A stretch of 47,461 bases of DNA from Prasinococcaceae sp. CCMP 1430. Taxonomy: Eukaryota > Plantae > Prasinodermophyta. This document shows positions 3 to 41,881 of the stretch, in pieces (the first letter of the stretch is position 1; every line of letters begins with the position of its first letter). The DNA lies in NCBI GenBank assembly GCA_013416795.1, contig RQSC01000008.1, positions 195,996 through 243,456 on the forward strand, given 5' to 3'. Under the pieces are notes generated by a model. It was not told the DNA's origin. It did not search any database and worked only from the letters and a program-made list of their open reading frames with translations. Made by a program: the position numbers and the translations under genes.

Positions 3-3000
3 CGCGCTGCGACGGCGACCACGGGCGCCGCGGCGCGCGACCCAGCGCCCGTCGCCGCGCCCGCCGCGTCCGCCTCGCAGGCGGAGGTCGATGACTCGGC
101 GTACGAGGCGGCCGAGCCCGTTGACATCCTGGCCGCGCTGGAGCGCCGCAAGTTCGGGGACGATGCGCTGCCGCTCCTTGAGGCGCTGGAGGCCAAGAAG
201 TGGACGGTCAAGCGCGACGCGCTGCAGGCGGTTAAGGGGGCGTGCAAGGACAACCCGAAGATCGACGGCTCTGGCTCCAACTACTTTGAGCTGTGCCGCC
301 TGATCAAGAAGCTGCTGGGGGATTCAAACGTGGCCATCGTGGTGGAAGCGTCCTCGACGATCACCGCACTCGCGGGCGGCATGCGCGCGGCGTTCGCCCA
401 GCACGCGCGTCAGCTGCTGCCGACCATGATTGACAAGCTGAAGGAGAAGAACACCGGCGTGGGCCGCGCCCTCAAGGAGGCGCTCGCCGTCGTCTCGCTG
501 CACGTGATGCCGCTCGTTGAAGTCGTCGACGACGCCAATCGCGGTTTCGGGCACAAGGTGCCCAAGGTGCGCATGGAGACCGCCAACTGGATCTGCAGCG
601 CCATTGGCGCGGCCGCGCCGGCCGAGGTCGCCAAGGCCCTGCCGGACATCGCCCCAAAGCTGGTCAAGATGGTGAGCGACGCGGACGCCTCGGCGCGCGA
701 GGCCGCGCTCATGGCGCTCGCCGCCGCGCAGCGCGCGGTGCCCCTGGACAAGGCGCTGCAGAAGCACCTCGACAAGCTCGACGCAAAACAGAAGCAAAAG
801 TTCGAGAAGATTCAAGCGACCGCGGGCGGCAGCGTCGACGCGCACGCGGACGCCGGCGGCTCGGGGCGGCCGGCCGCCCCGGGCGCCTCGAATGCAAAGC
901 CCGCTGGCCGGCCCAAGACCGCGCCTGCCAAGACCCCCGGCAAGGCGCGCCCGGCGTCCGCAAAGGCGGGCAGCGCGGCCGGCGCCGCGACGGAGGCAGG
1001 CCCTGCAATGTCGAAGGAGGAAGCCCTGGCCAAGGCGGAGGAGCTCGTAGACGACAAGACGATTGCGAAGCTGAGCTCGACGGACTGGAAGACTCGCGTC
1101 GAAGGCGTGGAGTGCGTGCAGCGCATGGTCGACGCACTCGAGGGCGAGTCTCTCAAGGCCGCCGCCGACCCCATCGTGCACTTGCTGGCGTACCGCGTGT
1201 GCAGCCCCAGCGAGAAAGTGTTCCAGATCACCAAGGCGGCGATCGAGTGCATCGGCGCGCTCGCGCGCCGCGAGGAGTCCGGTTGCTCTCGAGGGCTCGC
1301 GCATGTGGCCGTGAGCGTGCTCGCCCCTCGCATCGCCGACGTCAAGCTCAAGGGCGTGGCGACAGCGGCGTTGGACGCGCTCTGCCAGGCCGTCGGTCCC
1401 GACTTCGTCACCCTTGAGCTCGCGGGCGCCTGCAAGACGAACAAGAATGTGAAGGTAGTCGCCGAGATGCTCTCGTACGTTGCACAGGCGGTGCAGGACT
1501 ACGGGACTGGCGCATTCCCACACGTGTCCAAGGTGGTGGCTCTCGCGAAGGAGTGCCTGCAGATGACTGCCCCCGCCGCCAAGACTGGCGCCAAGAAACT
1601 CTGCCGTGCGCTCTACCGCTGGATGGGCCCGTCCATCCTGTCGCAGCTCGACGGCGTGAAGCCCGCAACGCTGGGCGATGTGAAGGCCGACCTTGCCAAG
1701 GCCGCGCATGAACCAGATTCGGCGCCGGCGAAGAAGGCGCGCAGGGGTGCGAGGAAGCCTAAAGCGCCCCCAAAGGCCGCAGCTGGCGCCACGGCAGCGT
1801 CGTCGACGGCCGACGCGCCAGCCACACCAGGTGCTCCCCAGCCAGAAGTAGACGAGGGCCCGCGGCGAGACGTGTCGTCTCAGCTCGGCCCGATCGTTTC
1901 AGGGCTCGGCAGCGCGCACTGGAAGGAGCGCCAGGCGGCGCTTGAGCGCCTCAAAGGCGTCATCGGTGATGCAAACGGTCGCGTCGCTGCGGCGGGCACG
2001 AACGCCACCTTCGAGGCGCTCAAGCCGGTCCTGGCCGACTCCAACAAAATGCTTATCATTCGCGCGCTCAACCTGCTGGGGGAGCTGGTGAAGGCTGTCG
2101 GCAAGGATGCCTCGAAGGAGGGCCGCTCGTGCATTCGCGCAACCTTCAAGTGCCTGAACGATCCGAAGAGCGCAGTACGCGATGCTGCGGTGCGGTGCCT
2201 CGACTGCTGGGGGGATGCCGTTGGCATCACCCCGCTGCTGGCCTCGATTGCAGTGGGCGCTGCGCGCGTCGCGTCCTCTGGCGCAGTCATTCCTGCGGAG
2301 GGGCGCGCAGCTTCGATGGGTTTCGCCGCGCGGCGCCTGCTAACTGCTGGCGCGGGCAACGTACGCACCAACGACGTTGCCAGTGCGCTCCTCAAGCCCA
2401 CCATCGGCGCCATCGGTGACAAGAATCCGAGCGTGCGCGCTAGCGGCGAGGCTCTGGGCGCGGCACTGGCGGCAGTGTGCGACCACAAGTCGCTCCGCGC
2501 AGCAACGGGGGGCGACAGCGCCCTCGAGAGTGCGCTGGAGAAGATGCTTTCGAAGGCAAGTGGCCCCGGGGACGGAGGCAAGACCCCCGGGCGCCGCCCG
2601 AAGACTCCGGGTGCGAAGCTTCGCACCCCAGGAAGGGGGGGGCGCACGCCAAGGACGGGGCGCACGCCGAAGACGGGCGCGAGGCCCTCCGCCTTGGTGC
2701 CGTCGGGCGCCTTCTTGCTTCCCAGCGACGGCAAGGCGGCGCGGGCGTTGCTTCTGCCGTCGCGAGCCGAGTGGTGCCTCGCGCCCGCCGTCGGTCAGGG
2801 CCATTTCGAGGCTCTTCGCGCCGAAGCGGAGGCGACTGGCGCCGTGCGCGAGGATATGCTCGAGCTCATGTTCTCCCCGAAGGCGAGGGAACGCGCAACA
2901 GCCGCCGCTGCACTGGCAGCCACGGCGACGGCCGGGGGGCTCCTGACGAGCGAGATAGTCGGCGTGGTGGACTTGCTACTGCGGTGGGTCGCTAGCGAGT

Positions 3001-5498
3001 TGCGGGACGATGGCGGCGCCGGCAGCGACTCTGCGGCTGCCCTCTCGGCCCTGTCTGCGATCACCGATGCGGCGTGCGAGCAGAACTACACGCTGAATTC
3101 GGTCGAGGCGGCCGTGATCATGCCGGCGCTCCTCGAGGCGGGTGCGAACGACGAAGCGGTCGCCGAGGGTTGTGAACAGGCGATCTCGTCTCTCTGCCGC
3201 ATCCACCCCACGTCGCGCGTCTTTGGCCTGCTTGCTGAGGGGGCGATGTCGTCGCCCACAGCTGTCGGCAAGGCGCGCGCACTGGCATCCATGAGCGCAA
3301 TCGCGAAACAGATGGGCAAGAGCAGCGCAACGTTTGCGTTCGCCGCGCTGCCCGCGCTGGCGCCGCTCTTGGCAGACCAAGATGCGGCCGTGCGCGGCGC
3401 TGTGCTCGCGTTCTGGGGCCGGGCCTATGGGCTCATCGGCGATGATGTCTGGCAGTACGTAGGAGAGCTGTCGAACCAGCAGGAGGAACTCCTACAGGAC
3501 AAGTTGTCGTGGGTGAAGCGCCAGGCTGAACACGAGGCTGCTGTCGCGGCAAGGTCACCACGGGCCGCGCAGCGGACGACGCCGGCCTTCGCCACGCCGC
3601 TGGGGCTTAAGGCGCACCCGGTGTCGGCTGAGGGCGCGCCCTCGACTCCGAGGCGCCCCGCCAGCGCAGCTGCGACGGCAGAGGATTTCAGCCCCGACTG
3701 GGAACGCGCCATGTCGCTGCTGCAAGCGCAAGGCAGCTCTCAGGTGGTGGAAGGGCTCAAGCTTGCGACGCACACAATGGAGATGGCCGGCCGCATGGAC
3801 GATGTCGTGCTCAGTGCCACCCTCGCCGAAGATGCGGACCTGCTGGTCACGCGCCTGGCCAAAGCGCTCCCAAGCCTCCTCGAGGACGCCGCGTCGTCGC
3901 ACACGTCCCCCCCGGGGCGACAAACGGTTGCTCTCAAGCCGGTGAAGTACCTGCTGAACACGCTGATGAACGCGTTCCAGCTGCCGTGCATCGCCCTGTC
4001 TGTACCCGAACCATCGCTGCGCGTCCTGCTGGCGGCCCTGTTGCACGCACTGCTCGACACCAACCTAACGTCGCTCGCGGAGGGCGTGCAGGTTCTAAAG
4101 GCGCTCAACGTGCTTGTGCTCAAGGTGCTGGAGAACATCGAGCGCTCGGACAGCTTCTGCGCCCTCATCGCACTCCTGCAGCAGCATCGCGGACCCGGTG
4201 CCGCCAGCAAACGTCCCAGTGCCCCCAAGGCCGCAGCGAGCGACACGACTGCGTTCGCGGATCTCGTCGTGCGTTGCCTGGTGAAGCTGACGAAGGCACT
4301 CGGCGCCACCATCGAGGCAGTCGACGTGCCTCGCGTTCTGCTTGCGGTACACGGCTACCTCATGGCTTTCTCCGTGGATGAGCTGCGAAAACTAGCCTCA
4401 ACCAACAGCCGCCCGCTCCGTATGATCAAGACCCTGCTGCACGAGCTCGTACGCGTCAAGGGCGAGGCCATCAACGACTGCCTGACGCTTGTGCCGGGGG
4501 GCAGCTCATGCAACGAGCCTATCGTCGCCCAGTACATCGCACTCAACCTGGCGTCGATGCACCCGGGCTCCGCAACCACGGCGGTGCCCGCGCCCGCGAC
4601 TGCTGCGGTGACGCCTACGAGCAACGCACGGCACTCGCCTACAGCGGACGCTGCGATGGGTGTAGCGCTCTCGGAGAGTTCCCCTAATGTCGCACGTCTG
4701 CCCGCGGGGCGCGCGGCTGCAAAGGCCTCGCCGGCTCCCGCCACTGCGCCATCGGCCGCGGCGGTCCCAGCGTCGCCAGCGCCTGCCGGACTGAAGAGCG
4801 AGCTGGCGAATATCTTCAAGAAGATCGGCAACAAGACCACCACGAGTGAGGGGTTAGAGGAGCTGTACCGGTTCACGCTCGCACACCCGGACGTCGACAT
4901 CACGCCGCATCTGCGCAAGACGAGCGCGGCGTTTAGGCAGTACATCCAGCAAGGGCTGGCGCGAGCGGGGGAGCGCGCGAAACGCGCCGCTGCCGCGGGC
5001 GCCGCTTCGAACGCCAAGCGAGCGGCCGCGGCCGACGTCGTGGCGATGCCATCGACCGCTGCCGCCGCTAAGAGTGCCGCCGACGCCGCCGCGCCCGAAT
5101 CCGTCGCTGCGCTGGCGGGAGGAGACGTGTCTACTGGGGCCGCCAAGTCGACGAGCGCAGCAGAGGGCTACCAGGCTCGCATGGAGGCGCTGCGCTCTGG
5201 CATTGCGAGCGAACAGGCGTCAGCGGGCACGCGCACGCCCGGCACCACAGGGGCTCGGGCAGCGGATGTAGACGCGCTGCGCAAGAGGATGAGAAGGTGC
5301 GTCGCCGCGCGCTTGACCTTTGCCACGGTTTGCAAAAGACCAGCCTGCGACATGGCGCGCTGACCCTCCGTCGCACCTTCGCACGCGCGCAGTCTGGGCG
5401 GCGGTGCACCTGCAACGAGCGCGGCAGTAGACGCGGCGGCCCCGGCGCGCTCCTCGACAGCCGACTTGCGCGCGAGGTTGGCGACGCTCGGCCGGTAG
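3..5498 (+). CDS. MOR1: MOR1/XMAP215/ch-TOG microtubule polymerase, 5'-partial; one intron 5297-5392
   Basis: Frame open from base 3. TOG starts EPVDIL..AKKWTVKRDAL, STDWKTRVEGVE, SAHWKERQAALE; TOG5-like LLRWVASE..EAAVIMPALLE; C-terminal PDWERAMSLL..QVVEGLK matches the plant MOR1 tail. AG|GTGCGT donor 5297, GCTGAC branch ~5360, CAG acceptor 5392, TAG 5496-5498. Confidence 0.95.
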
Positions 5499-17600: not shown

Positions 17601-18208
17601 GCCACACCTTCCGCACTGACGCGTCCTCGAGGTAGCCGCGGAATACCTCGAGCACCGCCACGCCATGCTCGCCGTCGGTGTCCACCCACACGCTCAGCGC
17701 GTCGTCCGCGACGCGCACGCCCGTGTCAGCGTCCTCAAACGCGGGTGGTGAGCCAGGGGTACCACCCTCGCCCGCCAACGCCTCGGGCAGCAGGCTGCTT
17801 GCGTGCACTGAGAAGCACACCATGTCGCCAGCGCACGCAGGCGAATCGTGCTGTATGTCGAGGCCGTCCACCTCTGTGTCGAGCGCCGCGACGCCCGCGC
17901 GGCGCGCGTAGAGCTCTCGCACAGCAAACTCGGCCTCCTCGACGGTGCGCACGTGCAGTGTTCCACACGCGACCGTGTCAACGGCGCCGCGCGGAGCGGC
18001 GTCCGACGTGTCTCTGGGCGCAGCTGCGTCCGGTGTGCGCGCCGGGCTGGCCGCCCGTGAGCGCGGCAGCGCACGGGCGGGGGAGCCTCCCGCTCGCGCG
18101 GGGCGCGTGGTCGAGGGCGCGGAGCGCGCCGTGTGCCACCACAGCGAGCCGCCCCCGCCCGCGCCACCGCTGCTCCCGCCGCCGCCACTGCTGCTCGGGA
18201 AAAAACAT
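14629..18208 (-). CDS. POP: Plant organellar DNA polymerase (family A, POP/PolI-like) with 3'-5' exonuclease; introns 15835-15942 and 15512-15613; start uncertain
   Basis: Exo motifs ALDTEV, KVWHNYGFDRH, GDTMHMARL, YALLDA. Pol motifs TETGR|LSSRRPNLQNQP, ADYGQLELRILAH, DFHSRTA, RRKAKTLNFSIAYG, AINTPIQGSAADI, LQVHDEII. The second intron is an in-frame 102 nt. Confidence 0.95.
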
Positions 18209-18438
18209 TTCCTAAGAATTTACACAAAAATGTGTCTCAAGAAAAAATAGCGGGCTGTTGCCGCAGTCCAGCAGCGCAGCACCCGAGGCAGAGCGCGCGC
18301 CGCAGGCGCGCGCCCCGCTGGCGCCCGCTGGCGCCACCCCAACGACGTCCGCCCAACTGCTACAGGCGCGCTCGCCGCTCTGAAGCGCTGCGCTCGCGGC
18401 GGCTCTCCCTTCCTCGTGCGCACGCGCGCCAGTCTTCC

Positions 18439-21400
18439 ATGGCGGACTGCGTGGCGTCCGAGGCAGAGCTGAGCGTGGACGCGCTCCTCGCGCTGGACAG
18501 CAGCAGTAGCGACGACGAGCGCAGCGAGGGTGGGGAGGGCGGTAGCCCTGGCGCCAGTGTCGGCGCTGGCGCAGGTGCCAACGCAGATGCAGGCGCTGGC
18601 GCAGAAGCAGGCGCGGACGTGGGCTCGGGTGGTGTGGGCGATGCGCTGCGGACTGGTCTTCAGGCTGAGGGCATGGGCGTCGGGACAGCGGAGCTGTTCC
18701 TGGATGACCTGCTGCTGAGCAGCGAAGGCGAGTACGAAGAGGAAGGAGACCGAGAGGATGGGGTCGGTGCGCGCGCTGGCGTGCCCACCGAAGCGTCGCT
18801 GGCATCTGTTGAGCAAGAGAGAGACCAAGAGGATCCTCCCCCGCTCGTGAACCCATTCACTGGTGCAGCAACACCGACCAGGGCGCTCGAGGTGACGCGC
18901 ACGGCCGGCGCCACGGTATCCAGGGTTGCTGAGCGCGACTCCTCAGAGGTAGCCGTGAGCGATGGAGACAACCCGTTCACACGCCTCGCGAGCACGCAAA
19001 TCACGCAGTCGCGAGAGCCTCAGCCACAGACACAAACACAGACGCATGCGCAGGTGCACAAGCTGGCGCTAGCAAGCTCTCGCATGACAAGCAACGCTAC
19101 TAGTCGTCTGCCAACCCGCCCGCCGCCGTCAGGCGTGTTCGGTGACGCAGCCATTGCGCAGGCGCTGCGTCGGCGGCGTGGCAGCGGCGGGGAAGCGTCG
19201 TCGTCGCCACCACGCGCGCGTCCGCGCCCGCGCTCACCCCTCCTCGCAGCGGAAGAGCCCGGCAGGCGTGGAAGCATCGACGAAGGCACAGGAAACGCGG
19301 CAGCGCTCTTTCACCGCTCGCCGTGCAAAGCGATGCTCGCGGCTGAGGAGCGCGAGCGAATGCTCGCTGCAGGCGCGGGCGCGCTACGTCCCGGTGAGGG
19401 CGTCAGTGACGGGGGCGCGGGTGGACCTGCAGACGGGCCGGGCGATCCTGGTCATGCTGGTGCGTTCGCAACACTACTACGCGCGCCTGCGCTGCTGCCT
19501 TCGGCAGTACGCCTCGAGCCTGCAGGAGCGCTTGCGCACGGCGTGGCGCACGCTGGACGGGCTCTCGGTACGCCAGTTTGCGTGGGGGCTTGCGCTGCGA
19601 CGGGATTTGTGGCTGTGGGCGGCTCGTCGGGTGTGGTACTGGTTGGCGACCCTGATGCTCCCGACGGCGAGGCCGCAGCAAGCAGCACCAAGCTGCTCGG
19701 TGGGCAAGGCGGCGGCGCCGCCGCTGCAGCCGCCGCTGCAGCATCGTGCGTTGCCTTTGATGCAGATGGTGATATGCTGCTTGTGGGCCATGCCAGCGGC
19801 CAGGTCGCAATATGGGACGTGGCACGTGGCGTGCTGTTGCGACGCTCGGGTGGCGCGCAGGGCGGTGGCAGCGGCGCTGAGCATCGCGTGGCAATCACCT
19901 CGGCGGCATTCGTCTCCCGGCATGTATCAGGAGCCAGCGGCGTGGTGCTCACTGCAGATGCGAGCGGTGTGGTGCTGCAGCACACACTGACGCTCAACCC
20001 GTTTCTCAAGCGCCTTACCGCCAAGACAGAGTGCCTGCTCGATGGCAAGAAGGCAGGCGCTGTGCCACTCGTGCTGCCTTGCATGACGAGCGACGCCGAA
20101 GAAGCGCTCGCCGCGGCTGTCGCGGCCAGCACCAACGGTGCACACGTGGATGGTGCGCCATCGGCCCCTGCAGGAGTGGGTGGACGGCAGGCGTCGCTCG
20201 CGTCAGTGTCTGCCGCGCATGCGCGCGGGCTTTGTGCTATTTTCACGCTCAAGAGCGTGATGTTCGTGCGCCTCTTCCCGTCGGTGGAAGTATGCACGGT
20301 ATGGCGCAGACCTGATGGCGTACGAGAGGGTGCGGTGCCATACGCTAGCTGGCGCGTGGCGGAGGATGCGTATGGCAGCGATGGCGGTGGCAGTGCCCTG
20401 CCTGCATTGCAACTCGTGGTCGCATGGGGAAAGATCGTCACGCTCCTGGGCATCGAGACCAGCGGCGGCTTCGAAATGACGGCCCTGTCCAGCTGGGAGC
20501 TGGGCTTTGAGGCCGCTGGCGTTCAATGGCTCGAAGGTCGCTCACTGTGCGTGCTTTCAGCCTCGGGGCTACTTTCGGTACACGAGCCCATCAGTGGTCT
20601 CGAGGTTGCGACGCACGACTTCGGTGAGGCCGCCGTGGGGGATTTGGCGTACCACGCTCACGTCGCGAATATTTATGGCAATCCTGAGCGCGCATGCCAC
20701 GGCGCCAGCGCTCTGGGCTCAGTGGGGCCGTCAACTGGTGCTCAGAGGGTGTATGTCCTGGGCAGCACCAGCGGCATCGTCGCGGGTTGGCTGCGTCCCT
20801 GGGACGAGCTTTGCGCGGCGCTTGCTGCGGGCGTCGGCGTTGAGCGCGAGGGAGGCACTGACGTGCAGGACGCAGGGCAGACAGTTGGCGCGGGAGTGGG
20901 TGCAGCCCTCGCGCTCGCGGCAGAGATCGCGTGTGGCGAGCCTGCACGTACCTGTGCTTGCGCCAAGCTTCCGCGAGACGCTGACGAGCTCGCCAAGCGG
21001 CTAGCGCCAGCGCTGCGTGCGATGAGCGCGGCATTCGCTGGCGAGGCAATCAGCCGCGCGCAGTCAGGGGCGGTGGGGAACAGCGGCAGCGGAAGCGAGG
21101 GAGCTGCCTCTGCCGCGGACGCTGCGTCCGCTATTGCCGGGTTTTGCCTTCGCCCGGGCCGCCCGATGCGCGTTGCCGAAACGCTGCGCCATGCCCTCTT
21201 TGAAGACGTTTACGCGCAATTCGAAGGGGCAGGTGCCGCCGCAGAACTGCTGGACGCGCTCGAAGCGTGCGTTCTTGCCGGAACAGTATCATCGCTCCCC
21301 CCAGAGCTCATGCAGGCACTGGTCGAGCTGCGAGCGGGCCGTGGCGAGGTGGCGCGCGTTGAGGCCGCCGTCCTCAACATGGACATTGCCTCGCTTGACT

Positions 21401-23622
21401 TCAACCAGGTGATCAAGCTATGCGAGAAGCACGAGCTGTACTCGGCGCTCGCCGACGTCTTCTCACGCGGTCTCGGAGATGTGTTGACGCCACTTGAGAG
21501 GCTGCTTGCTGCCGCTGAACGACAGCTGGCAGCGTGCGGTGCGAACAACACAGGAAGCACGTTCGTTGAGGGAGGCGCGCCGGACGTCGTGTACAAGTTG
21601 CTGCTGTTGCTACGCTGTTGCTTCGTCGGCGAGCGCTTCCCGCCTGGGCGCGGTTCCCTGGGGCGTGACGAGGCAGCGCGTGCGCGCCAGGCAGCGCTCG
21701 AGTTCGTAGCCGGACGAGGCTCGATGGCGACGCTGCTTAGAGCTGACGTCGTCGCCACGCTCGAGACACTTGGTTTCGCCTTTGACCGCTCCTTCGTGCA
21801 AGCCATCGAGACAAGGTGCGATGCGCCTCCACACTCCTCCAGAAGGTACACCGCCTGCATGCGCGCGAGCATATGCGACGGGATGTGCGCTGACTACGAA
21901 AGTCATTGGCGCAGTGTTGTCGACGGTGCGAACCCACTCGCAGAGGCAGATGCAGGAGAGGCGCGCATGGTCGATGAGAGCCTCCTCCAGGCAGTCGCCG
22001 ACTGTCTTTCGACCCTGAGCGCAGAGGAGAGCGCTGGAACGGGCCTCATGGCATTTTCGCTTGGCCTCGTGATCGAGTTTGTGGCCGAGCAGGCAGGCAG
22101 CGGCGTCGTGTCGCTGCGAGCGCCGGTGGCGGCGCGTGCGCTGCAGCAGCTTGCCTCGCCTGCACCGCCGCCGCCTGGCTCCGTCACATCGGTGGTACAT
22201 GAGGGGCACGCATCGAGACGTCAGCGCGCCTTCATGGCGGTGATGGATAGGCTTCTGCCCAGTGGGGGTGGCACGGATGAGGCCACCGTGAGCTCGGAGG
22301 AGATCGAGCGCATGGCGCGGCTAGGGGGTTTCATGTCGGCCGTGGCTAAGCTGCGCGCGCGGGGGGGCGATCTCGCAGGCGCGTTCGACGCGCTACGCGC
22401 GGACGCATTCGCTCCCCGCGATGCGCCACACTTGGCGCTCAACGCGATGCTGCGCGCGCCGCACTGCGGCGTCTTCGACGTCAGCGCCGACTACGAGGTG
22501 CGCGCGCTCACCTCGGAGGCCCACGCGCAGGCCAATGCCAGCACACAGGCTACGCGAGCGATCGAGGCGGCACATGCCGAGCTCCGGCGCGTAGCGGTTG
22601 GCGCTCTGTCCGAACTCGCGTCGCGCGACGCGCACATGGCGGCCGAGCTCATGGTGGAACACTTCGCCGCGGAGGCCGACTCCGCGGTCGACGCGCTGGG
22701 TGACAGGCCTGAGCTGCAGCTCGAGTGCCTGCGCAGGATCGTTGGCGGCGGAGGTGCAGGTGACATCGAAGGCGCGCGCGTGCCTGGCGTGGCGGCACGC
22801 GCCTCGGGAAAGTATGTGGCGCTACTGTGCCAATTTGAGCCGGCCAGCGTGGTGCCGTTCCTGCGCTCGTCGAATGAGTACGACCTGGATGCGTGCCTCG
22901 CGGCCTGCCGGGCCGGGGAATGCGTGGCGGGCACAGCGCTGCTGCTCGAGCGCGCGGGCGAGGCAGCGGAGGCGCTCAAGTTGCTCCTTGACGAAGCAAA
23001 CGTCACGCTGGCATGTCTAGCCGAGCGTATCCTGGTTGGTGGGTACGCTTCGACCGGCTTCGCGGTCGAAGAGGCTCAGGCTATGGCCGCGCTCAATGAC
23101 GCTGCCGCCCTGTGCGACCGCGCGTCGTGGCCTACCGACGCCGAGACCGAGCGTGCGTGGTTCGACGTGGTGCGCTGCGCGGTGGCGCCGCTTCGCGAGG
23201 TGCGCTGGGCGATGGCCGCGCGCGCGGCGCTCGAGTCGCGGACCGCGGGCGCCGCGGCAGAAGCAGCGGGCGCGGCGGCTGCCATGGGCCTGAATGTGGA
23301 CTCATGGCTAGTGACTTCCTCGGCGGAGTCGCTCAGGCGCCTATTGGCGGCCCTGGCACGCCTAGCTGAGCTGGCGATGGAGCAGGCGGCATCGGCGCTT
23401 TCCTTGGCGAATGTCCTCAAGCAGCTGGTCGATGAGCACGGCGCAGGCGAGCTTGGCGACTTCCGCGAAACCATCGCAGCCACGTTGGGCTCCATCCGTT
23501 ACCAGGAGGCCATCACAAGCACCGCGCGCTCTCTAGTCGGCGCTGACGCTTTTGCGGCCTTCAACGGCGCGCTCGAAAGGCGCGCGCGCGCGAGGCGCCT
23601 GCCAGCGCAAGAAGCAGCCTGA
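18439..23622 (+). CDS. VPS8: VPS8 (CORVET subunit): acidic N-terminus, WD40 propeller, alpha-solenoid/CHCR; in-frame intron 21816-21914
   Basis: LLVGHASGQVAIWDV, VLTADASGVV, LPPELMQALVE..VEAAVLNMDIASLDFNQVIKLCEKHELYSAL..RGLGDVLTPL, YVALLCQFEPASVVPFLRSSNEYDLDACL. AAG|GTGCG donor, GCTGAC branch, GCGCAG acceptor. Confidence 0.92.
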   Translation: MADCVASEAELSVDALLALDSSSSDDERSEGGEGGSPGASVGAGAGANADAGAGAEAGADVGSGGVGDALRTGLQAEGMGVGTAELFLDDLLLSSEGEYEEEGDREDGVGARAGVPTEASLASVEQERDQEDPPPLVNPFTGAATPTRALEVTRTAGATVSRVAERDSSEVAVSDGDNPFTRLASTQITQSREPQPQTQTQTHAQVHKLALASSRMTSNATSRLPTRPPPSGVFGDAAIAQALRRRRGSGGEASSSPPRARPRPRSPLLAAEEPGRRGSIDEGTGNAAALFHRSPCKAMLAAEERERMLAAGAGALRPGEGVSDGGAGGPADGPGDPGHAGAFATLLRAPALLPSAVRLEPAGALAHGVAHAGRALGTPVCVGACAATGFVAVGGSSGVVLVGDPDAPDGEAAASSTKLLGGQGGGAAAAAAAAASCVAFDADGDMLLVGHASGQVAIWDVARGVLLRRSGGAQGGGSGAEHRVAITSAAFVSRHVSGASGVVLTADASGVVLQHTLTLNPFLKRLTAKTECLLDGKKAGAVPLVLPCMTSDAEEALAAAVAASTNGAHVDGAPSAPAGVGGRQASLASVSAAHARGLCAIFTLKSVMFVRLFPSVEVCTVWRRPDGVREGAVPYASWRVAEDAYGSDGGGSALPALQLVVAWGKIVTLLGIETSGGFEMTALSSWELGFEAAGVQWLEGRSLCVLSASGLLSVHEPISGLEVATHDFGEAAVGDLAYHAHVANIYGNPERACHGASALGSVGPSTGAQRVYVLGSTSGIVAGWLRPWDELCAALAAGVGVEREGGTDVQDAGQTVGAGVGAALALAAEIACGEPARTCACAKLPRDADELAKRLAPALRAMSAAFAGEAISRAQSGAVGNSGSGSEGAASAADAASAIAGFCLRPGRPMRVAETLRHALFEDVYAQFEGAGAAAELLDALEACVLAGTVSSLPPELMQALVELRAGRGEVARVEAAVLNMDIASLDFNQVIKLCEKHELYSALADVFSRGLGDVLTPLERLLAAAERQLAACGANNTGSTFVEGGAPDVVYKLLLLLRCCFVGERFPPGRGSLGRDEAARARQAALEFVAGRGSMATLLRADVVATLETLGFAFDRSFVQAIETRCDAPPHSSRRYTACMRASICDGMCADYESHWRSVVDGANPLAEADAGEARMVDESLLQAVADCLSTLSAEESAGTGLMAFSLGLVIEFVAEQAGSGVVSLRAPVAARALQQLASPAPPPPGSVTSVVHEGHASRRQRAFMAVMDRLLPSGGGTDEATVSSEEIERMARLGGFMSAVAKLRARGGDLAGAFDALRADAFAPRDAPHLALNAMLRAPHCGVFDVSADYEVRALTSEAHAQANASTQATRAIEAAHAELRRVAVGALSELASRDAHMAAELMVEHFAAEADSAVDALGDRPELQLECLRRIVGGGGAGDIEGARVPGVAARASGKYVALLCQFEPASVVPFLRSSNEYDLDACLAACRAGECVAGTALLLERAGEAAEALKLLLDEANVTLACLAERILVGGYASTGFAVEEAQAMAALNDAAALCDRASWPTDAETERAWFDVVRCAVAPLREVRWAMAARAALESRTAGAAAEAAGAAAAMGLNVDSWLVTSSAESLRRLLAALARLAELAMEQAASALSLANVLKQLVDEHGAGELGDFRETIAATLGSIRYQEAITSTARSLVGADAFAAFNGALERRARARRLPAQEAA

Positions 23623-36726: not shown

Positions 36727-37785
36727 ATGGCGCCACCGGAGGCGACGGGCGATGGGCCCGGGGCGGCGCTCACCGTGCAGCAGCAGGAGGCCTACCTGTT
36801 CCAGCGGATGCCCAAACACCAGCAGCAGGAGCAGGGAGCGGGCGAGCGGGCGGGGCAGCGCGTCGTGCTGCAGCAGGCGAGGCAGACGGCGGCGGACAGA
36901 AGGGTGCAGGGGAACGCGCGCGATCACGCGGCAGGCGGGTGGCATGATGAGGCGGCCCTGCGCGTGCGAGCTCTGCTCGCGGCCGACGCCGCCTGGGGGC
37001 GCCCCCGTCCGGCAGCGGGCGGCGCGCTGCGGCAGTTGAGGCCGGAGCTCGCCGCGTGGGCGTGGGAGCTGGGCAGCGCGCTCGAGCTCTCGAGCGAGTC
37101 GGTGCACATGGCGATGGTGATCGTAGACCACCAATGCACGCGCATGCGCGTGATCAGGCCCAATCTCCAGATGTCGCTGGTGGCCGCCGTGCGCATCGCC
37201 ACCAGGGCGGCGGACGAGAACGTGCCGTCGGCCGAGCAGCTCTCCGAGATGACCGCAGGCACGTACTCGCCGCGGCTGATCCTTGCGACGGAGGAGAAGA
37301 TTCGCGCGGTGCTCGCCCTCACCGACGCCGTCAAGCCTGCGCTCGCACCGCCGCTGGGCGGGGAGGGTGCCGAGGGGAACCCGGCGCGCGCGAGGCTGCC
37401 GCCTCACGCGCTGGAGGCGCTCGACGCGCTCAGCGAGTACGCGGGCGTGACGGCGGACAGGCGCGCGGAAGAGACCGCGCGGCGCGTGCTCAACCAGGCC
37501 CTGTGCGTGAGCGACCTGGCGATGAACATCCCCACGACGGAGCTGGCCGCCGCGGCGCTGCTGTGTGCAGAGAGCGCGGACGCGCGCGCGGTGACCTCCG
37601 CCAACCTCGCGTCTGCGCTCGGCCTGCCGGCGGCGAGGCTGCACGCGATGTGCGAGCGCGTCGGCGATGCCGCGAGCATGATGCCGCCTGTCAAGGATCG
37701 GCACATCAGCCCGCGCAGCCCCATTGGCAGCCTCTGCCTGTTCGACGGCGATTCGGACGACGGCTGCCGCGAGCGCGAGTGCTGA
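36727..37785 (+). CDS. Divergent cyclin (N- and C-terminal cyclin folds)
   Basis: LRPELAAWAWELGSALELSSESVHMAMVIVDH..NLQMSLVAAVRIATRAADE..TAGTYSPRLILATEEKI aligns with the cyclin box (MRAILVDW..ETLYLAVNYLD..LQLVG..IASKYEE..YT...ILxME). Second fold PTTELAAAALL; tail SPRSPIG. Confidence 0.85.
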   Translation: MAPPEATGDGPGAALTVQQQEAYLFQRMPKHQQQEQGAGERAGQRVVLQQARQTAADRRVQGNARDHAAGGWHDEAALRVRALLAADAAWGRPRPAAGGALRQLRPELAAWAWELGSALELSSESVHMAMVIVDHQCTRMRVIRPNLQMSLVAAVRIATRAADENVPSAEQLSEMTAGTYSPRLILATEEKIRAVLALTDAVKPALAPPLGGEGAEGNPARARLPPHALEALDALSEYAGVTADRRAEETARRVLNQALCVSDLAMNIPTTELAAAALLCAESADARAVTSANLASALGLPAARLHAMCERVGDAASMMPPVKDRHISPRSPIGSLCLFDGDSDDGCREREC

Positions 37786-38854: not shown

Positions 38855-39184
38855 TCACTCGCCCACCGTGCTCCACTCCCAGCCCGTCTGCGCGGCCGTC
38901 TGTGTGGGTCGCTCGGTGCGCACGTCGAAGCCCCACCTCGCCGCGAAGCGCTCGGCCTCCTCGGCCTCCGCGGCACCGAAGAACTCGTCGAGCTCGGCCT
39001 GCGTGGGCCCGCGCCCGAACAGGGGGCGCGCGACGTGCCGCACGGGCTTGGGCGAGGGCGCGACCGTGCGCCCCAGCCGCACGTGCAAGGCCGGCAACGC
39101 CGGCAGCACTGGCGGCTGCGCTGGCGCCGCGCCGCGCCGCGCCGCGGCGGCAACTGCGGCCGCCTCCAGCTCCGCGTCCGGCTG
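38855..39184 (-). CDS. KRP: Cyclin-dependent kinase inhibitor (KRP/ICK-Cip/Kip CDI domain), terminal exon
   Basis: VARPLFGRGPTQAELDEFFGAAEAEEAERFAARWGFDVRTERP..GWEWSTVGE*. Pyrimidine-rich CAG|CAG acceptor at ~39185 with CTGAC branch upstream; 5' exon(s) unresolved. Confidence 0.88.
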   Translation of the reverse strand, partial: QPDAELEAAAVAAAARRGAAPAQPPVLPALPALHVRLGRTVAPSPKPVRHVARPLFGRGPTQAELDEFFGAAEAEEAERFAARWGFDVRTERPTQTAAQTGWEWSTVGE

Positions 39185-39530
39185 CTGCGGGAAGGACAAG
39201 GGGGTGAAGGTGTGGGGGGAGGGGCCGCATGGGCGAGTCAGCTCCTTCGCATCGGCACGCCGCCCGTCCATCGCATCCTCTCTCTCTCTTTCCCTCCCTA
39301 CTCCTGCCCCTGACCCCCCCGGCACTTCCTGCAGAGCGCCCCCCCTCATCTCCCCCCCCCCCCTTCCCTCTTTCGAGCTTTCCCGTCTGGACCTGATCTC
39401 CATCCCCCTCTCCCAAATGATTGGCGCGCCGTTTCGCGAAACGGCGCGCGCGCGCCCCTTCGTTTCGCGCGCGCGCGCGGCATATTCCGCGCGGGTGCGA
39501 ACGCGGCGCTCCCCGCTGCCTCGTCGACGG

Positions 39531-40436
39531 NNNNNNNNNNNNNNNNNNNNNNNNNNNNNNNNNNNNNNNNNNNNNNNNNNNNNNNNNNNNNNNNNNNNNN
39601 NNNNNNNNNNNNNNNNNNNNNNNNNNNNNNNNNNNNNNNNNNNNNNNNNNNNNNNNNNNNNNNNNNNNNNNNNNNNNNNNNNNNNNNNNNNNNNNNNNNN
39701 NNNNNNNNNNNNNNNNNNNNNNNNNNNNNNNNNNNNNNNNNNNNNNNNNNNNNNNNNNNNNNNNNNNNNNNNNNNNNNNNNNNNNNNNNNNNNNNNNNNN
39801 NNNNNNNNNNNNNNNNNNNNNNNNNNNNNNNNNNNNNNNNNNNNNNNNNNNNNNNNNNNNNNNNNNNNNNNNNNNNNNNNNNNNNNNNNNNNNNNNNNNN
39901 NNNNNNNNNNNNNNNNNNNNNNNNNNNNNNNNNNNNNNNNNNNNNNNNNNNNNNNNNNNNNNNNNNNNNNNNNNNNNNNNNNNNNNNNNNNNNNNNNNNN
40001 NNNNNNNNNNNNNNNNNNNNNNNNNNNNNNNNNNNNNNNNNNNNNNNNNNNNNNNNNNNNNNNNNNNNNNNNNNNNNNNNNNNNNNNNNNNNNNNNNNNN
40101 NNNNNNNNNNNNNNNNNNNNNNNNNNNNNNNNNNNNNNNNNNNNNNNNNNNNNNNNNNNNNNNNNNNNNNNNNNNNNNNNNNNNNNNNNNNNNNNNNNNN
40201 NNNNNNNNNNNNNNNNNNNNNNNNNNNNNNNNNNNNNNNNNNNNNNNNNNNNNNNNNNNNNNNNNNNNNNNNNNNNNNNNNNNNNNNNNNNNNNNNNNNN
40301 NNNNNNNNNNNNNNNNNNNNNNNNNNNNNNNNNNNNNNNNNNNNNNNNNNNNNNNNNNNNNNNNNNNNNNNNNNNNNNNNNNNNNNNNNNNNNNNNNNNN
40401 NNNNNNNNNNNNNNNNNNNNNNNNNNNNNNNNNNNC
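39531..40436. other. Assembly gap (~906 N)
   Basis: Run of N. Confidence 1.
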
Positions 40437-40440
40437 ACAC

Positions 40441-40535
<95 letters not shown>

Positions 40536-40560
40536 CACACACACACGCACACACACACAC
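40437..40560. repeat. (CA)n microsatellite, at least 60 units, running into the gap
   Basis: Directly visible; probably caused the gap. Confidence 0.97.
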
Positions 40561-40678: not shown

Positions 40679-41211
40679 GGGAGCTTGCGCAGCGCGCGCG
40701 CGCGCGCGCGCGCGCGCGCGCAAAACCGCGCCCGCCCTCGCGATGATGACACGTCCACGTGTTTTTTTTAACGCCCACGCCACGGGGGAGCCGGGAGGGG
40801 GATGGGGATCGCCCCGCCGACCGCGCGGGCGCCCGCACGCGCGGCCGCGCGGGATAGCTGGCGAACGATCCCCGAGATTGTTCCGCGCGCGGATTGCGTC
40901 GGCGTTCCGTCCCCGCGGCGGGGAGGGCGCGCGACCAGCGACGAGGGGGGGGGGCGAACGAGCGGGATTTGTTTCGCGAAACAATCCGCGAGCGCGAGCG
41001 CGCGTTGATGGAGGGTTTTTGATGACGGGAACGATTCCATATGACGGACATCGGCGGCGAACCCGGCCGCGGGCGGGGGGGCGCGGATCGGCCGCCGATT
41101 TGCGGCGGATCTCAATTCGGTGGGGGGCGGCGCGCGTGAGGCCCGCGGCGGGGCGCGCCCGATCGACCCCCGCCGCGGATGGCTCCGCCCGGATTGTCCT
41201 GCCCGACGCAC

Positions 41212-41881
41212 CGTACACGTCGTCATCAATCTTCACCAGCCACTGCGCCCGCGACAGCAGCGGGTGGCGCGCTGCAGACGCGAAGAAGGTGCGCGTTTTG
41301 TGAGGCAAATTGCTGTAGCGCTCCGTAACGCCGTGCATGCGCATGAAGCCTCCATAGATGTCGACCTCTGCTTGCAGCGCTGCTTCGGCTTCCTGCGCTG
41401 TGATGTTACCTACTGGTGCGCTCGCATCGGCATCCCCTACAGCGAATCGCATGGCGATGCTGTGTCTCTCTTCAAATTTGGCCAGCGCGTCACGCGAGGC
41501 CGGGAACCACGTCGCGCGCAAGTTGGCTCGTCGAGCAGCGGAGCTTTCGCCAAAGCCAGTGAATACTGCGACGAAGGCCAGAATGTCCCCTTCGCTACGC
41601 GCGTGGGGCAGGACGGAGTCGGTGGTCCAGCCGCCACGACTGTCTCTGCGCGATGAGATCTCAGGCCCTCCCATTCCCAATAGGAGGCGGTGCGAACTTC
41701 TGCTTTCGATGCCCGCGCGGGCATCTCTGTTCTTACCCACCTGCCTCTGCGACGCCAAGAGCGTGCCTGTCGTCAATGCGAGTAGCACGAGCGCAGCGCC
41801 GTACATTGCGAGGCGAGAGAAGCCGCATCGCGCGCATCGCGCGAGGCGCGGGCCGTCCGCATGAGCCTCCAACGCCCGCAT
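41212..41881 (-). pseudogene. Second GT31 copy: exon 1 only in visible sequence (truncated paralog, or remainder in the gap)
   Basis: Clearly paralogous protein (RRANLRATWFPASRDALAKFEE..ERYSNLPHKTRTFF..WLVKIDDDVY) with the same G|GTGCGT donor; no exon-2 homology between 41210 and 40437. Confidence 0.7.

What the first reader, a model, noticed from the sequence alone, without database searches (positions are those of the whole stretch)
38855..39184. CDK inhibitor combining the animal Cip/Kip RxLFG motif with the plant KRP/ICK motif
Seen: RPLFG (39028-39014), then PTQAELDEFFGAAE, RWGFD (W at 38935) and WEW at the C-terminus. Established: p21/p27/p57 dock cyclins through R-x-L-F-G about 30 residues before K-W-N-F-D. 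Land-plant KRPs carry P..AE(L/I)(D/E)EFF..AE..KYNFD..EW at the C-terminus and are generally described as sharing only the CDK-binding part with p27, without RxLFG. Here both occur, with R-to-W spacing of 31 aa (p27: 30), the animal-type Trp and the plant-type C-terminal position. Inference: an ancestral-looking intermediate supporting common descent of Cip/Kip and KRP, with RxL docking lost in land plants.
Basis: partly seen in the sequence, partly recalled or inferred. Interest (0 to 1): 0.85.

Follow-up and report, generated by a model that had tools for sequence, protein, structure and literature searches.

The report
Green-alga CDK inhibitor keeping RxLFG motif
This is the last exon of an ordinary but undescribed green-alga cell-cycle brake protein of the p27/KRP family, which still carries the cyclin-docking motif of animal p27/p21 that the nine flowering-plant relatives I sampled lack.

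Summary
Window 38855-39184 (minus strand) is a terminal coding exon of 109 codons. It matches Pfam CDI (PF02234) at 43.9 bits against a cutoff of 25. RPLFG, PTQAELDEFFGAAE, RWGFD and WEW all sit at the stated coordinates, and R-to-W spacing is 31 residues.

- A profile of algal homologues aligns colinearly with human p27, with the algal RxLFG on p27 R30-G34.
- An AlphaFold2 model finds only cyclin-CDK-bound p27/p21 chains as its top PDB matches.
- Eight algal homologues (including Chlorella variabilis and Myrmecia bisecta) all keep L-F at this position, five with R at -2, and all have the domain at the C-terminus.
- Nine angiosperm KRPs lack the motif and have Tyr instead of Trp.
- The algal domain scores equally against animal and angiosperm HMMs (30.0 and 29.8 bits), so it does bridge the two.

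Common descent of Cip/Kip and KRP is already accepted, since they share one Pfam family. The two closest relatives have a shifted Arg. The 5' exon lies in an assembly gap. Transcription, cyclin docking and the time of motif loss are untested.

A second upstream RxLF motif is conserved in all five full-length algal proteins.

Verdict: a new member of a known family, of moderate interest.

The parts
38855..39184 (-). Terminal coding exon (109 codons plus TGA) of a CDI-family CDK inhibitor
   Evidence: Translation. Pfam CDI at 43.9 bits. GC3 0.93. Haplotypes from TARA contigs show only substitutions here and no indels.
39185..39530 (-). 3' part of the upstream intron or non-coding region: acceptor cccgcag, C-rich tract, ctgac branch-like site. 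It runs into the assembly gap.
   Evidence: Sequence. Frame-shifting 1, 2 and 4-nt indels between haplotypes at 39281-39406. The same ctgac...cccgcag layout in phase 0 occurs in the related species locus L021, which has no in-frame ATG upstream.
39014..39028 (-). R-P-L-F-G, aligned to p27 R30-N-L-F-G34 (the cyclin hydrophobic-patch docking motif in p27)
   Evidence: Profile alignment to p27. L-F invariant in the algal alignments A1, A2 and A4.
38933..39001 (-). Predicted linker helix QAELDEFFGAAEAEEAERFAARW, including the plant 'motif C' (E[IL][DE]EFF)
   Evidence: AlphaFold2 helix at residues 24-46 of the 71-aa query, with block pLDDT 92-94. Aligns with the plant MEME motif KIPTTREIEEFF....
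38924..38938 (-). R-W-G-F-D, equivalent to p27 K-W-N-F-D and plant K-Y-N-F-D (start of the CDK N-lobe-binding hairpin)
38873..38881 (-). W-E-W, equivalent to p27 Y74-E-W76 and plant Y-E-W. Only five residues follow before the stop, so there is no p27-type 3-10 helix (FYY).
39531..40435 (.). Assembly gap (905 N) that most likely hides the 5' exon(s)
   Evidence: All metagenome contigs of this species break in or near this region.

Best explanation
The exon encodes the C-terminal kinase-inhibitory domain of a small CDK inhibitor (probably about 140-250 aa) of the Cip/Kip-KRP (Pfam CDI) family, from a GC-rich marine green alga. Earlier notes of this scan name the organism as Prasinoderma coloniale; I did not check this.

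Inferred mechanism, by homology with p27-cyclin A-CDK2. The protein is disordered alone and folds onto a cyclin-CDK dimer. The R-P-L-F-G segment lies on the cyclin's hydrophobic docking patch. The QAELDEFF...RFAAR helix spans the gap between cyclin and kinase. The W-G-F-D-V...P...W-E-W hairpin binds and distorts the CDK N-lobe. The protein ends five residues after W-E-W, so like plant KRPs it cannot insert a 3-10 helix into the ATP site.

The RxLFG plus Trp combination is best read as retention of the ancestral state of the family. Green algae keep it, and the angiosperm KRPs sampled have lost it (LFG gone, W changed to Y).

Shown here: family membership, motif positions, colinearity with p27, conservation among algae, and absence in angiosperms. 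Inferred: cyclin docking, CDK inhibition, and the direction of evolutionary change.
For: Pfam CDI at 43.9 bits, above the cutoff of 25. Seven of eight algal homologues pass the same cutoff.

An exhaustive phmmer search finds a small algal family that includes Myrmecia bisecta KAK9820182.1. Chlorella variabilis 'expressed protein' P0032 joins it.

The algal profile hits human p27 in the PDB at E 1.2e-5. The alignment is colinear, with aRaLFG on ACRNLFG and W on W60.

The AlphaFold2 model has mean pLDDT 85.6 and shows a helix followed by short strands. Its seven best Foldseek PDB matches are all p27/p21 chains bound to cyclin-CDK. The top match is 1JSU_C, with probabilities of 0.44-0.96 (0.92-0.96 for the first four) and TM about 0.5.

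Motif table:
- Algae: xxLF(G/D/A) lies 30-37 residues before W, and the domain is C-terminal.
- Fish p21 and mite proteins: RxLFG lies 30-31 residues before RWGFD, and the domain is N-terminal.
- Nine angiosperm KRPs: no such motif, KYNFD instead, and a C-terminal domain.

Bridging scores: 30.0 bits against the animal HMM and 29.8 against the angiosperm HMM, whereas animal and angiosperm sequences score only 6-16 bits against each other's HMM.

Haplotypes show no change in the CDI domain and no indels in the exon, whereas frame-shifting indels occur upstream at 39281-39406.
Against: No transcript was found: an exact 31-mer search of JGI contigs gave 0 matches. The 5' exon and start codon are missing in the 905-N gap, so the full protein is unknown.

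An unspliced 138-aa model starting at ATG 39274 cannot be excluded for this species. No frame-shifting indel lies between 39185 and 39274.

The Arg is at -4, not -2, in the two closest relatives P0002 and P0003, and it is absent in P0007.

Foldseek E-values are weak (0.045-0.42) for this short model.

The plant and animal samples are small (9 and 7). They were drawn by a profile seeded with algal sequences.

No streptophyte alga, bryophyte or fern was examined. No binding or inhibition data exist.
Confidence: 0.8

Rival explanations
1. The cyclin-docking motif of these algal inhibitors is the second, upstream R-x-[LVI]-F motif. The L-F-G next to the helix is conserved only as the first turn of the kinase-inhibitory domain, so the R at -2 in this gene is incidental.
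For: An upstream [RK]x[LIVM]F is present in 5 of 5 full-length algal proteins, against 0.11 expected, and 0 of 20,000 shuffles reach 5. Likely copies also occur in the upstream ORF of L022 and in L021. The Arg of RxLFG is shifted or absent in 3 of 8 algal homologues, including the two closest.
Against: The L-F-G is at exactly the p27/p21 spacing and aligns on p27 L32-F33-G34, which are the residues that contact cyclin A in 1JSU (established structure). p21 also uses two Cy motifs, so the two readings are not exclusive. The upstream motif cannot be checked in this gene because its 5' exon is missing.
Confidence: 0.2
2. The RxLFG arose here by chance or convergence and is not inherited from the common ancestor shared with animal Cip/Kip.
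For: Only five residues are involved. The Arg position varies among close relatives.
Against: L-F is invariant in all 8 algal proteins, including Chlorella variabilis and Myrmecia bisecta. It sits at the same distance from the Trp as in fish p21 and mite CDI proteins in my sample and as in human p27. The whole 50-residue domain is colinear with p27. The motif occurs once in 95,000 six-frame residues of the window, in the right frame and place.
Confidence: 0.07
3. The exon is a decaying or unexpressed remnant, or part of a mis-joined scaffold, and not a working gene.
For: No transcript contig was found. The 5' part is missing behind a 905-N gap, and the upstream GT31 gene is also truncated there.
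Against: GC3 is 0.93. At least five haplotypes in ocean metagenomes carry an intact open frame, with only substitutions in the exon and none in the CDI domain, while the flanking non-coding DNA carries many indels. All family-invariant residues are present.
Confidence: 0.05

Closest known systems
Human p27Kip1 / p21Cip1 kinase-inhibitory domain (PDB 1JSU, 6P8E-H)
   Same: Colinear RxLFG, linker helix, W-x-F-D hairpin and (Y/W)-E-W. R-to-W spacing is 31 here against 30 in p27. It has Trp rather than Tyr, and RWGFD is identical to fish p21. The AF2 model's best PDB matches are these chains.
   Different: The domain is at the C-terminus, not the N-terminus. The protein stops five residues after W-E-W, so the 3-10 helix (F87-Y88-Y89) that fills the CDK2 ATP site is absent. 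There is no PCNA-binding or QT-type C-terminal region.
Land-plant ICK/KRP proteins (e.g. Arabidopsis KRP1-7; the angiosperm KRPs P0022-P0033 sampled here)
   Same: C-terminal position of the CDI domain and termination shortly after (Y/W)EW. The P-T-x-x-E-[ILM]-[DE]-E-F-F 'motif C' is shared. The Euphorbia KRP has the identical AELDEFF.
   Different: The angiosperm KRPs have no L-F-G before the P-T block and have K-Y-N-F-D instead of R-W-G-F-D. The plant conserved block starts at KIPT, directly after the LFG column. The N-terminal KRP motifs (MGKY, GVRTRA) could not be looked for here.
Uncharacterised green-algal CDI proteins: Chlorella variabilis 'expressed protein' (P0032) and Myrmecia bisecta KAK9820182.1 (P0008)
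   Same: Same subfamily: a C-terminal CDI with RRLF(D/G), RWGFD or RWAWD, and W/Y-x-W.
   Different: Only 30-35% identical in the domain. Both have a visible N-terminal part with a second RxLF motif, which is hidden in the assembly gap in this gene.
SIAMESE/SMR plant CDK inhibitors
   Same: Share only the E-I-E-x-F-F 'motif C', which is thought to bind cyclin (PMC10904545).
   Different: No CDI hairpin (WxFD...YEW). They are a different family.

Membership tests
Pfam CDI (PF02234), the Cip/Kip-KRP superfamily | Match to the CDI profile above the gathering score | tested here: met
   43.9 bits against a cutoff of 25, E 2.5e-11, profile positions 2-47 of 49.
Pfam CDI (PF02234), the Cip/Kip-KRP superfamily | CDK N-lobe-binding hairpin motifs (W/Y)-x-F-D ... 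P ... (Y/W)-E-W | tested here: met
   RWGFDV, P93 and WEW are present. They align on p27 W60-N-F-D-F and Y74-E-W76.
Pfam CDI (PF02234), the Cip/Kip-KRP superfamily | Stoichiometric binding and inhibition of cyclin-CDK | not testable with these tools
   Needs protein biochemistry. Only single-chain structure prediction was available.
Animal Cip/Kip (p21/p27/p57) | RxLFG cyclin-docking motif about 30 residues before the Trp | tested here: met
   RPLFG lies 31 residues before W84 and aligns to p27 R30-G34.
Animal Cip/Kip (p21/p27/p57) | Inhibitory domain at the N-terminus, with a long regulatory C-terminal region | tested here: not met
   The stop codon comes five residues after WEW. The animal sequences have 100-149 residues after the Trp.
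Animal Cip/Kip (p21/p27/p57) | 3-10 helix (p27 F87-Y88) that occupies the ATP pocket | tested here: not met
   The protein ends before the position where this element would lie.
Plant ICK/KRP | CDI domain at the extreme C-terminus | tested here: met
   26 residues from the Trp to the end, against 22-26 in nine angiosperm KRPs.
Plant ICK/KRP | P-T-x-x-E-[ILM]-[DE]-E-F-F block (motif 2 / motif C) | tested here: met
   PTQAELDEFF. It aligns with the published plant motif KIPTTREIEEFF.
Plant ICK/KRP | K-Y-N-F-D with Tyr, and no LFG upstream | tested here: not met
   RWGFD with Trp, and RPLFG present.
Plant ICK/KRP | N-terminal and central KRP motifs (MGKY..., GVRTRAK nuclear-localisation block) | not testable with these tools
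   The 5' exon lies in the 905-N gap. The full-length algal homologues show none of these motifs.

The most novel reading that the evidence does not exclude
Green algae, including an early-branching lineage if the genome is Prasinoderma, preserve the ancestral CDK inhibitor of green plants. This ancestor would have a p27-type bipartite domain (RxLFG cyclin docking plus a Trp hairpin), already placed at the C-terminus and lacking the ATP-site helix, together with a second N-terminal RxLF motif as in p21. The line leading to flowering plants later lost the LFG docking and changed Trp to Tyr, which altered how KRPs recognise cyclins.
Probability: 0.45. Interest if true: 0.55.

Novelty: new member of a known kind. 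Interest (0 to 1): 0.4.

Why it matters
Plant KRPs are usually described as only faintly similar to p27. One paper argues they probably contact cyclin-CDK differently because the domain sits at the other end of the protein (PMC3410867).

These algal proteins show a continuous series. They have the full p27-like docking, helix and hairpin module in the plant-type C-terminal position. They score equally well against animal and angiosperm models.

This gives a concrete, testable picture of how the plant KRP domain derives from the common eukaryotic inhibitor. It also offers a simple single-copy system for asking whether RxL docking matters in the green lineage.

The gain is incremental. Homology of the two groups is already accepted, and comparable algal sequences already sit unremarked in public databases.

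Tried and rejected
- Single-sequence search of PDB sequences gave no hit. The profile search was needed.
- The search for homologous proteins with full-length algal alignments was swamped by low-complexity words and returned only the query set. Adding the published plant motif as one row brought in angiosperm KRPs, Chlorella and animal p21.
- I looked for a spliced transcript or more relatives in JGI metagenome contigs. The exact 31-mer gave 0 matches. Alignment A4 had no usable conserved stretch. A5 gave 228 pattern matches, none confirmed.
- Key closed-access papers were not held: De Veylder 2001, Verkest 2005 and Torres Acosta 2011.
- A full-text search for LFG + KRP + cyclin found 0 open papers. 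The soybean KRP supplements hold no sequences.
- Exact look-ups of five window ORFs for an organism name gave none.
- A fusion of the upstream GT31 exon with the CDI exon (the 1008-aa 'ORF' read through the N run) was rejected. Full-length algal homologues are small stand-alone proteins, and P0005 has an in-frame stop before its ATG.
- The long in-frame extension MEIRSRR... upstream of 39274 was rejected as coding, because haplotypes differ there by 1, 2 and 4-nt indels.
- The upstream 'RARGLF' at about 40990 was rejected as an exon, because it overlaps a repeated TTTCGCGAAA palindrome in low-GC non-coding-looking DNA.

Full report
**What is there**

On the minus strand, window 38855-39184 translates without interruption into 109 residues followed by TGA. 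The exon begins directly after a canonical acceptor, cccgcag|CAG. This acceptor is preceded by a C-rich tract and a ctgac branch-like site.

- RPLFG at 39028-39014
- PTQAELDEFFGAAE at 39007-38966
- RWGFD at 38938-38924
- WEW at 38881-38873, with five residues left before the stop

R.LFG and [KR]W[GN]FD each occur once in about 95,000 six-frame residues of the window. They are in the same frame and 31 residues apart.

The peptide matches Pfam CDI (PF02234) at 43.9 bits, E 2.5e-11, above the cutoff of 25. Residue L55 sits on profile position 2, so the L-F-G lies inside the Pfam model that already unites animal Cip/Kip and plant KRP proteins. Third-position GC is 0.93.

**Gene model**

The exon contains no Met. 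Upstream the sequence runs into a 905-N assembly gap at 39531-40435. Beyond the gap lies the first exon of an unrelated GT31 galactosyltransferase gene.

Ocean-metagenome contigs (TARA and Logan) of the same species carry the identical exon, but all break near the gap. Among these haplotypes the exon shows only substitutions, none of them in the CDI domain. The region 39281-39406 shows 1, 2 and 4-nt indels, so it is non-coding.

Two related species support splicing.
- Locus L021 has the same ctgac...cccgcag acceptor in phase 0 and no in-frame ATG for the whole 284 nt upstream.
- In locus L022 the homologous ORF has no ATG at all and opens three codons after a stop, at a good acceptor. An upstream ATG-started ORF ends in a good donor (ACG|GTATGT). 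Joined, they give a plausible two-exon, 245-aa protein.

I therefore read the window feature as the terminal exon of a spliced gene whose 5' exon is hidden in the gap. An unspliced 138-aa product from ATG 39274 is not formally excluded.

**Relatives**

An exhaustive phmmer search of 1.8 billion representatives found only seven true relatives at E below 1e-3. One is from Myrmecia bisecta, and the rest are from marine or other sequencing runs. A further profile search added the Chlorella variabilis 'expressed protein', nine angiosperm KRPs, fish p21 and mite CDI proteins.

Full-length algal members are 136-211 aa, always with the CDI at the C-terminus. For P0005 an in-frame stop precedes the ATG in three independent contigs.

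Earlier notes of this scan identify the genome as Prasinoderma coloniale. I did not verify this. The 68% GC, the long intron-free ORFs and the marine metagenome occurrence are consistent with it.

**Is the RxLFG homologous to that of p27?**

A profile of the algal domains hits human p27 chains in the PDB at E 1.2e-5. The alignment is a single colinear block. The algal a-R-a-L-F-G falls on p27 A28-C-R-N-L-F-G34, the helix on the p27 helix, W on W60, and W-E-W on Y74-E-W76.

AlphaFold2 with the eight-sequence alignment gives a confident model with mean pLDDT 85.6. It has an extended N-terminal segment, a helix over QAELDEFF...RFAARW and short strands after it. Its seven best Foldseek matches in the PDB are all p27 or p21 chains bound to cyclin-CDK, with 1JSU_C first. 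Probabilities for the first four are 0.92-0.96 and TM is about 0.5, but E-values are weak at 0.045-0.42.

**Distribution of the motif**

| Group | Motif before the Trp/Tyr | Core | Domain position |
|---|---|---|---|
| 8 algal proteins | L-F in 8/8; R at -2 in 5 (window RPLFG, RTLFG, RSLFG, RRLFG, Chlorella RRLFD); G follows in 6 | W (RWGFD, KWGFD or RWAWD) | C-terminal |
| 7 animal proteins (fish p21, mite) | RxLFG 30-31 residues before W | RWGFD | N-terminal |
| 9 angiosperm KRPs | nothing comparable | KYNFD/KYNYD | C-terminal |

The two closest relatives have the Arg displaced (RPQALFG, RHCALFA), and one protein has AQLFG.

A published MEME motif for the plant CDI starts at KIPT (PMC13408456). 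It aligns immediately after the LFG column.

HMMs built from the animal and the angiosperm domains score the window peptide at 30.0 and 29.8 bits. Animals score 6-16 bits on the angiosperm model, and angiosperms score 8-16 bits on the animal model. The algal domain is therefore a real sequence bridge. The samples are small and were retrieved with an algal-seeded profile.

**How it most likely works**

By homology with the p27-cyclin A-CDK2 structure (established knowledge), the domain should fold on a cyclin-CDK dimer. L-F of RPLFG would sit in the cyclin hydrophobic patch. The acidic helix would bridge the two subunits. The Trp-rich hairpin would sit on the CDK N-lobe.

The protein stops five residues after W-E-W. 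It therefore lacks the 3-10 helix that p27 puts into the ATP site, and should inhibit as plant KRPs are thought to.

A second [RK]-x-[LIVM]-F motif is present upstream in all five full-length algal proteins, against 0.11 expected. None of 20,000 shuffles reaches 5. Likely copies also occur in the upstream parts of L022 and L021. These inhibitors may therefore use two docking motifs, as p21 does. Alternatively, the upstream one may be the main docking site.

**Novelty**

I found no open paper that mentions LFG together with KRP and cyclin, or RxL together with KRP in algae.

Even so, the homology of KRP and Cip/Kip is the accepted view. They share one Pfam family, and a 2026 survey that included Prasinoderma states that KRP occur in plants and animals with scattered presence among unicellular eukaryotes (PMC13237563). 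Comparable algal proteins are already in public databases as hypothetical proteins.

The finding is thus a new member of a known family. It carries a useful but incremental evolutionary point. Its key functional steps, its transcription and the time of motif loss remain untested.

Noticed in passing
L018:155-790, L026:171-731, L027:94-504 (P0005, P0004, P0007); P0008; P0032; L022:2205-2651; L021:~160-215: A second conserved [RK]-x-[LIV]-F motif (RDLFSVP, RDVFARP, RELFAEP, KRLFDS, RKLFPR) lies 40-100 residues upstream of the CDI domain in all five full-length algal inhibitors (0 of 20,000 shuffles reach this). Likely copies occur in the upstream ORF of L022 (SRMLFARS) and in L021 (RRDIFDS). This resembles the two Cy motifs of p21.
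   Followed up: partly
window 36727-37785 (+) and L022:3619-4680: The inhibitor gene lies tail-to-tail, 1.07 kb from a 352-aa cyclin gene (Pfam Cyclin_N, E 9.7e-12). In the related species of P0002 the tail-to-tail neighbour is instead a DP (E2F partner) gene. In both species a cell-cycle gene sits next to the CDK inhibitor.
   Followed up: partly
window 39432-39441 and 40972-40981 (plus TTTCGCGC at 39463-39470): The palindrome TTTCGCGAAA, which looks like overlapping inverted E2F sites, occurs only twice in the 47-kb window (0.05 expected). The two copies lie one on each side of the gap upstream of the inhibitor exon. The copy at 39432 is kept in same-species contigs L001 and L009. It is not seen near the homologues of other species.
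   Followed up: partly
window 41212-41881 (-): First exon of a GT31 galactosyltransferase (Pfam Galactosyl_T profile 1-92 of 195), ending at a GT donor. The rest of the domain is missing and is presumably also lost in the 905-N gap.
   Followed up: no
window 40436-40560 and 39340-39365: A (TG)n microsatellite and a long G-run flank the assembly gap. Every metagenome contig of this species also breaks here, so the region is hard to assemble with short reads.
   Followed up: partly
window 330-5363 (+) and 18133-23622 (+): Very long uninterrupted ORFs: a 1677-aa XMAP215/CLASP-type TOG protein and an 1829-aa Vps8. They show that the genome is intron-poor and gene-dense.
   Followed up: no
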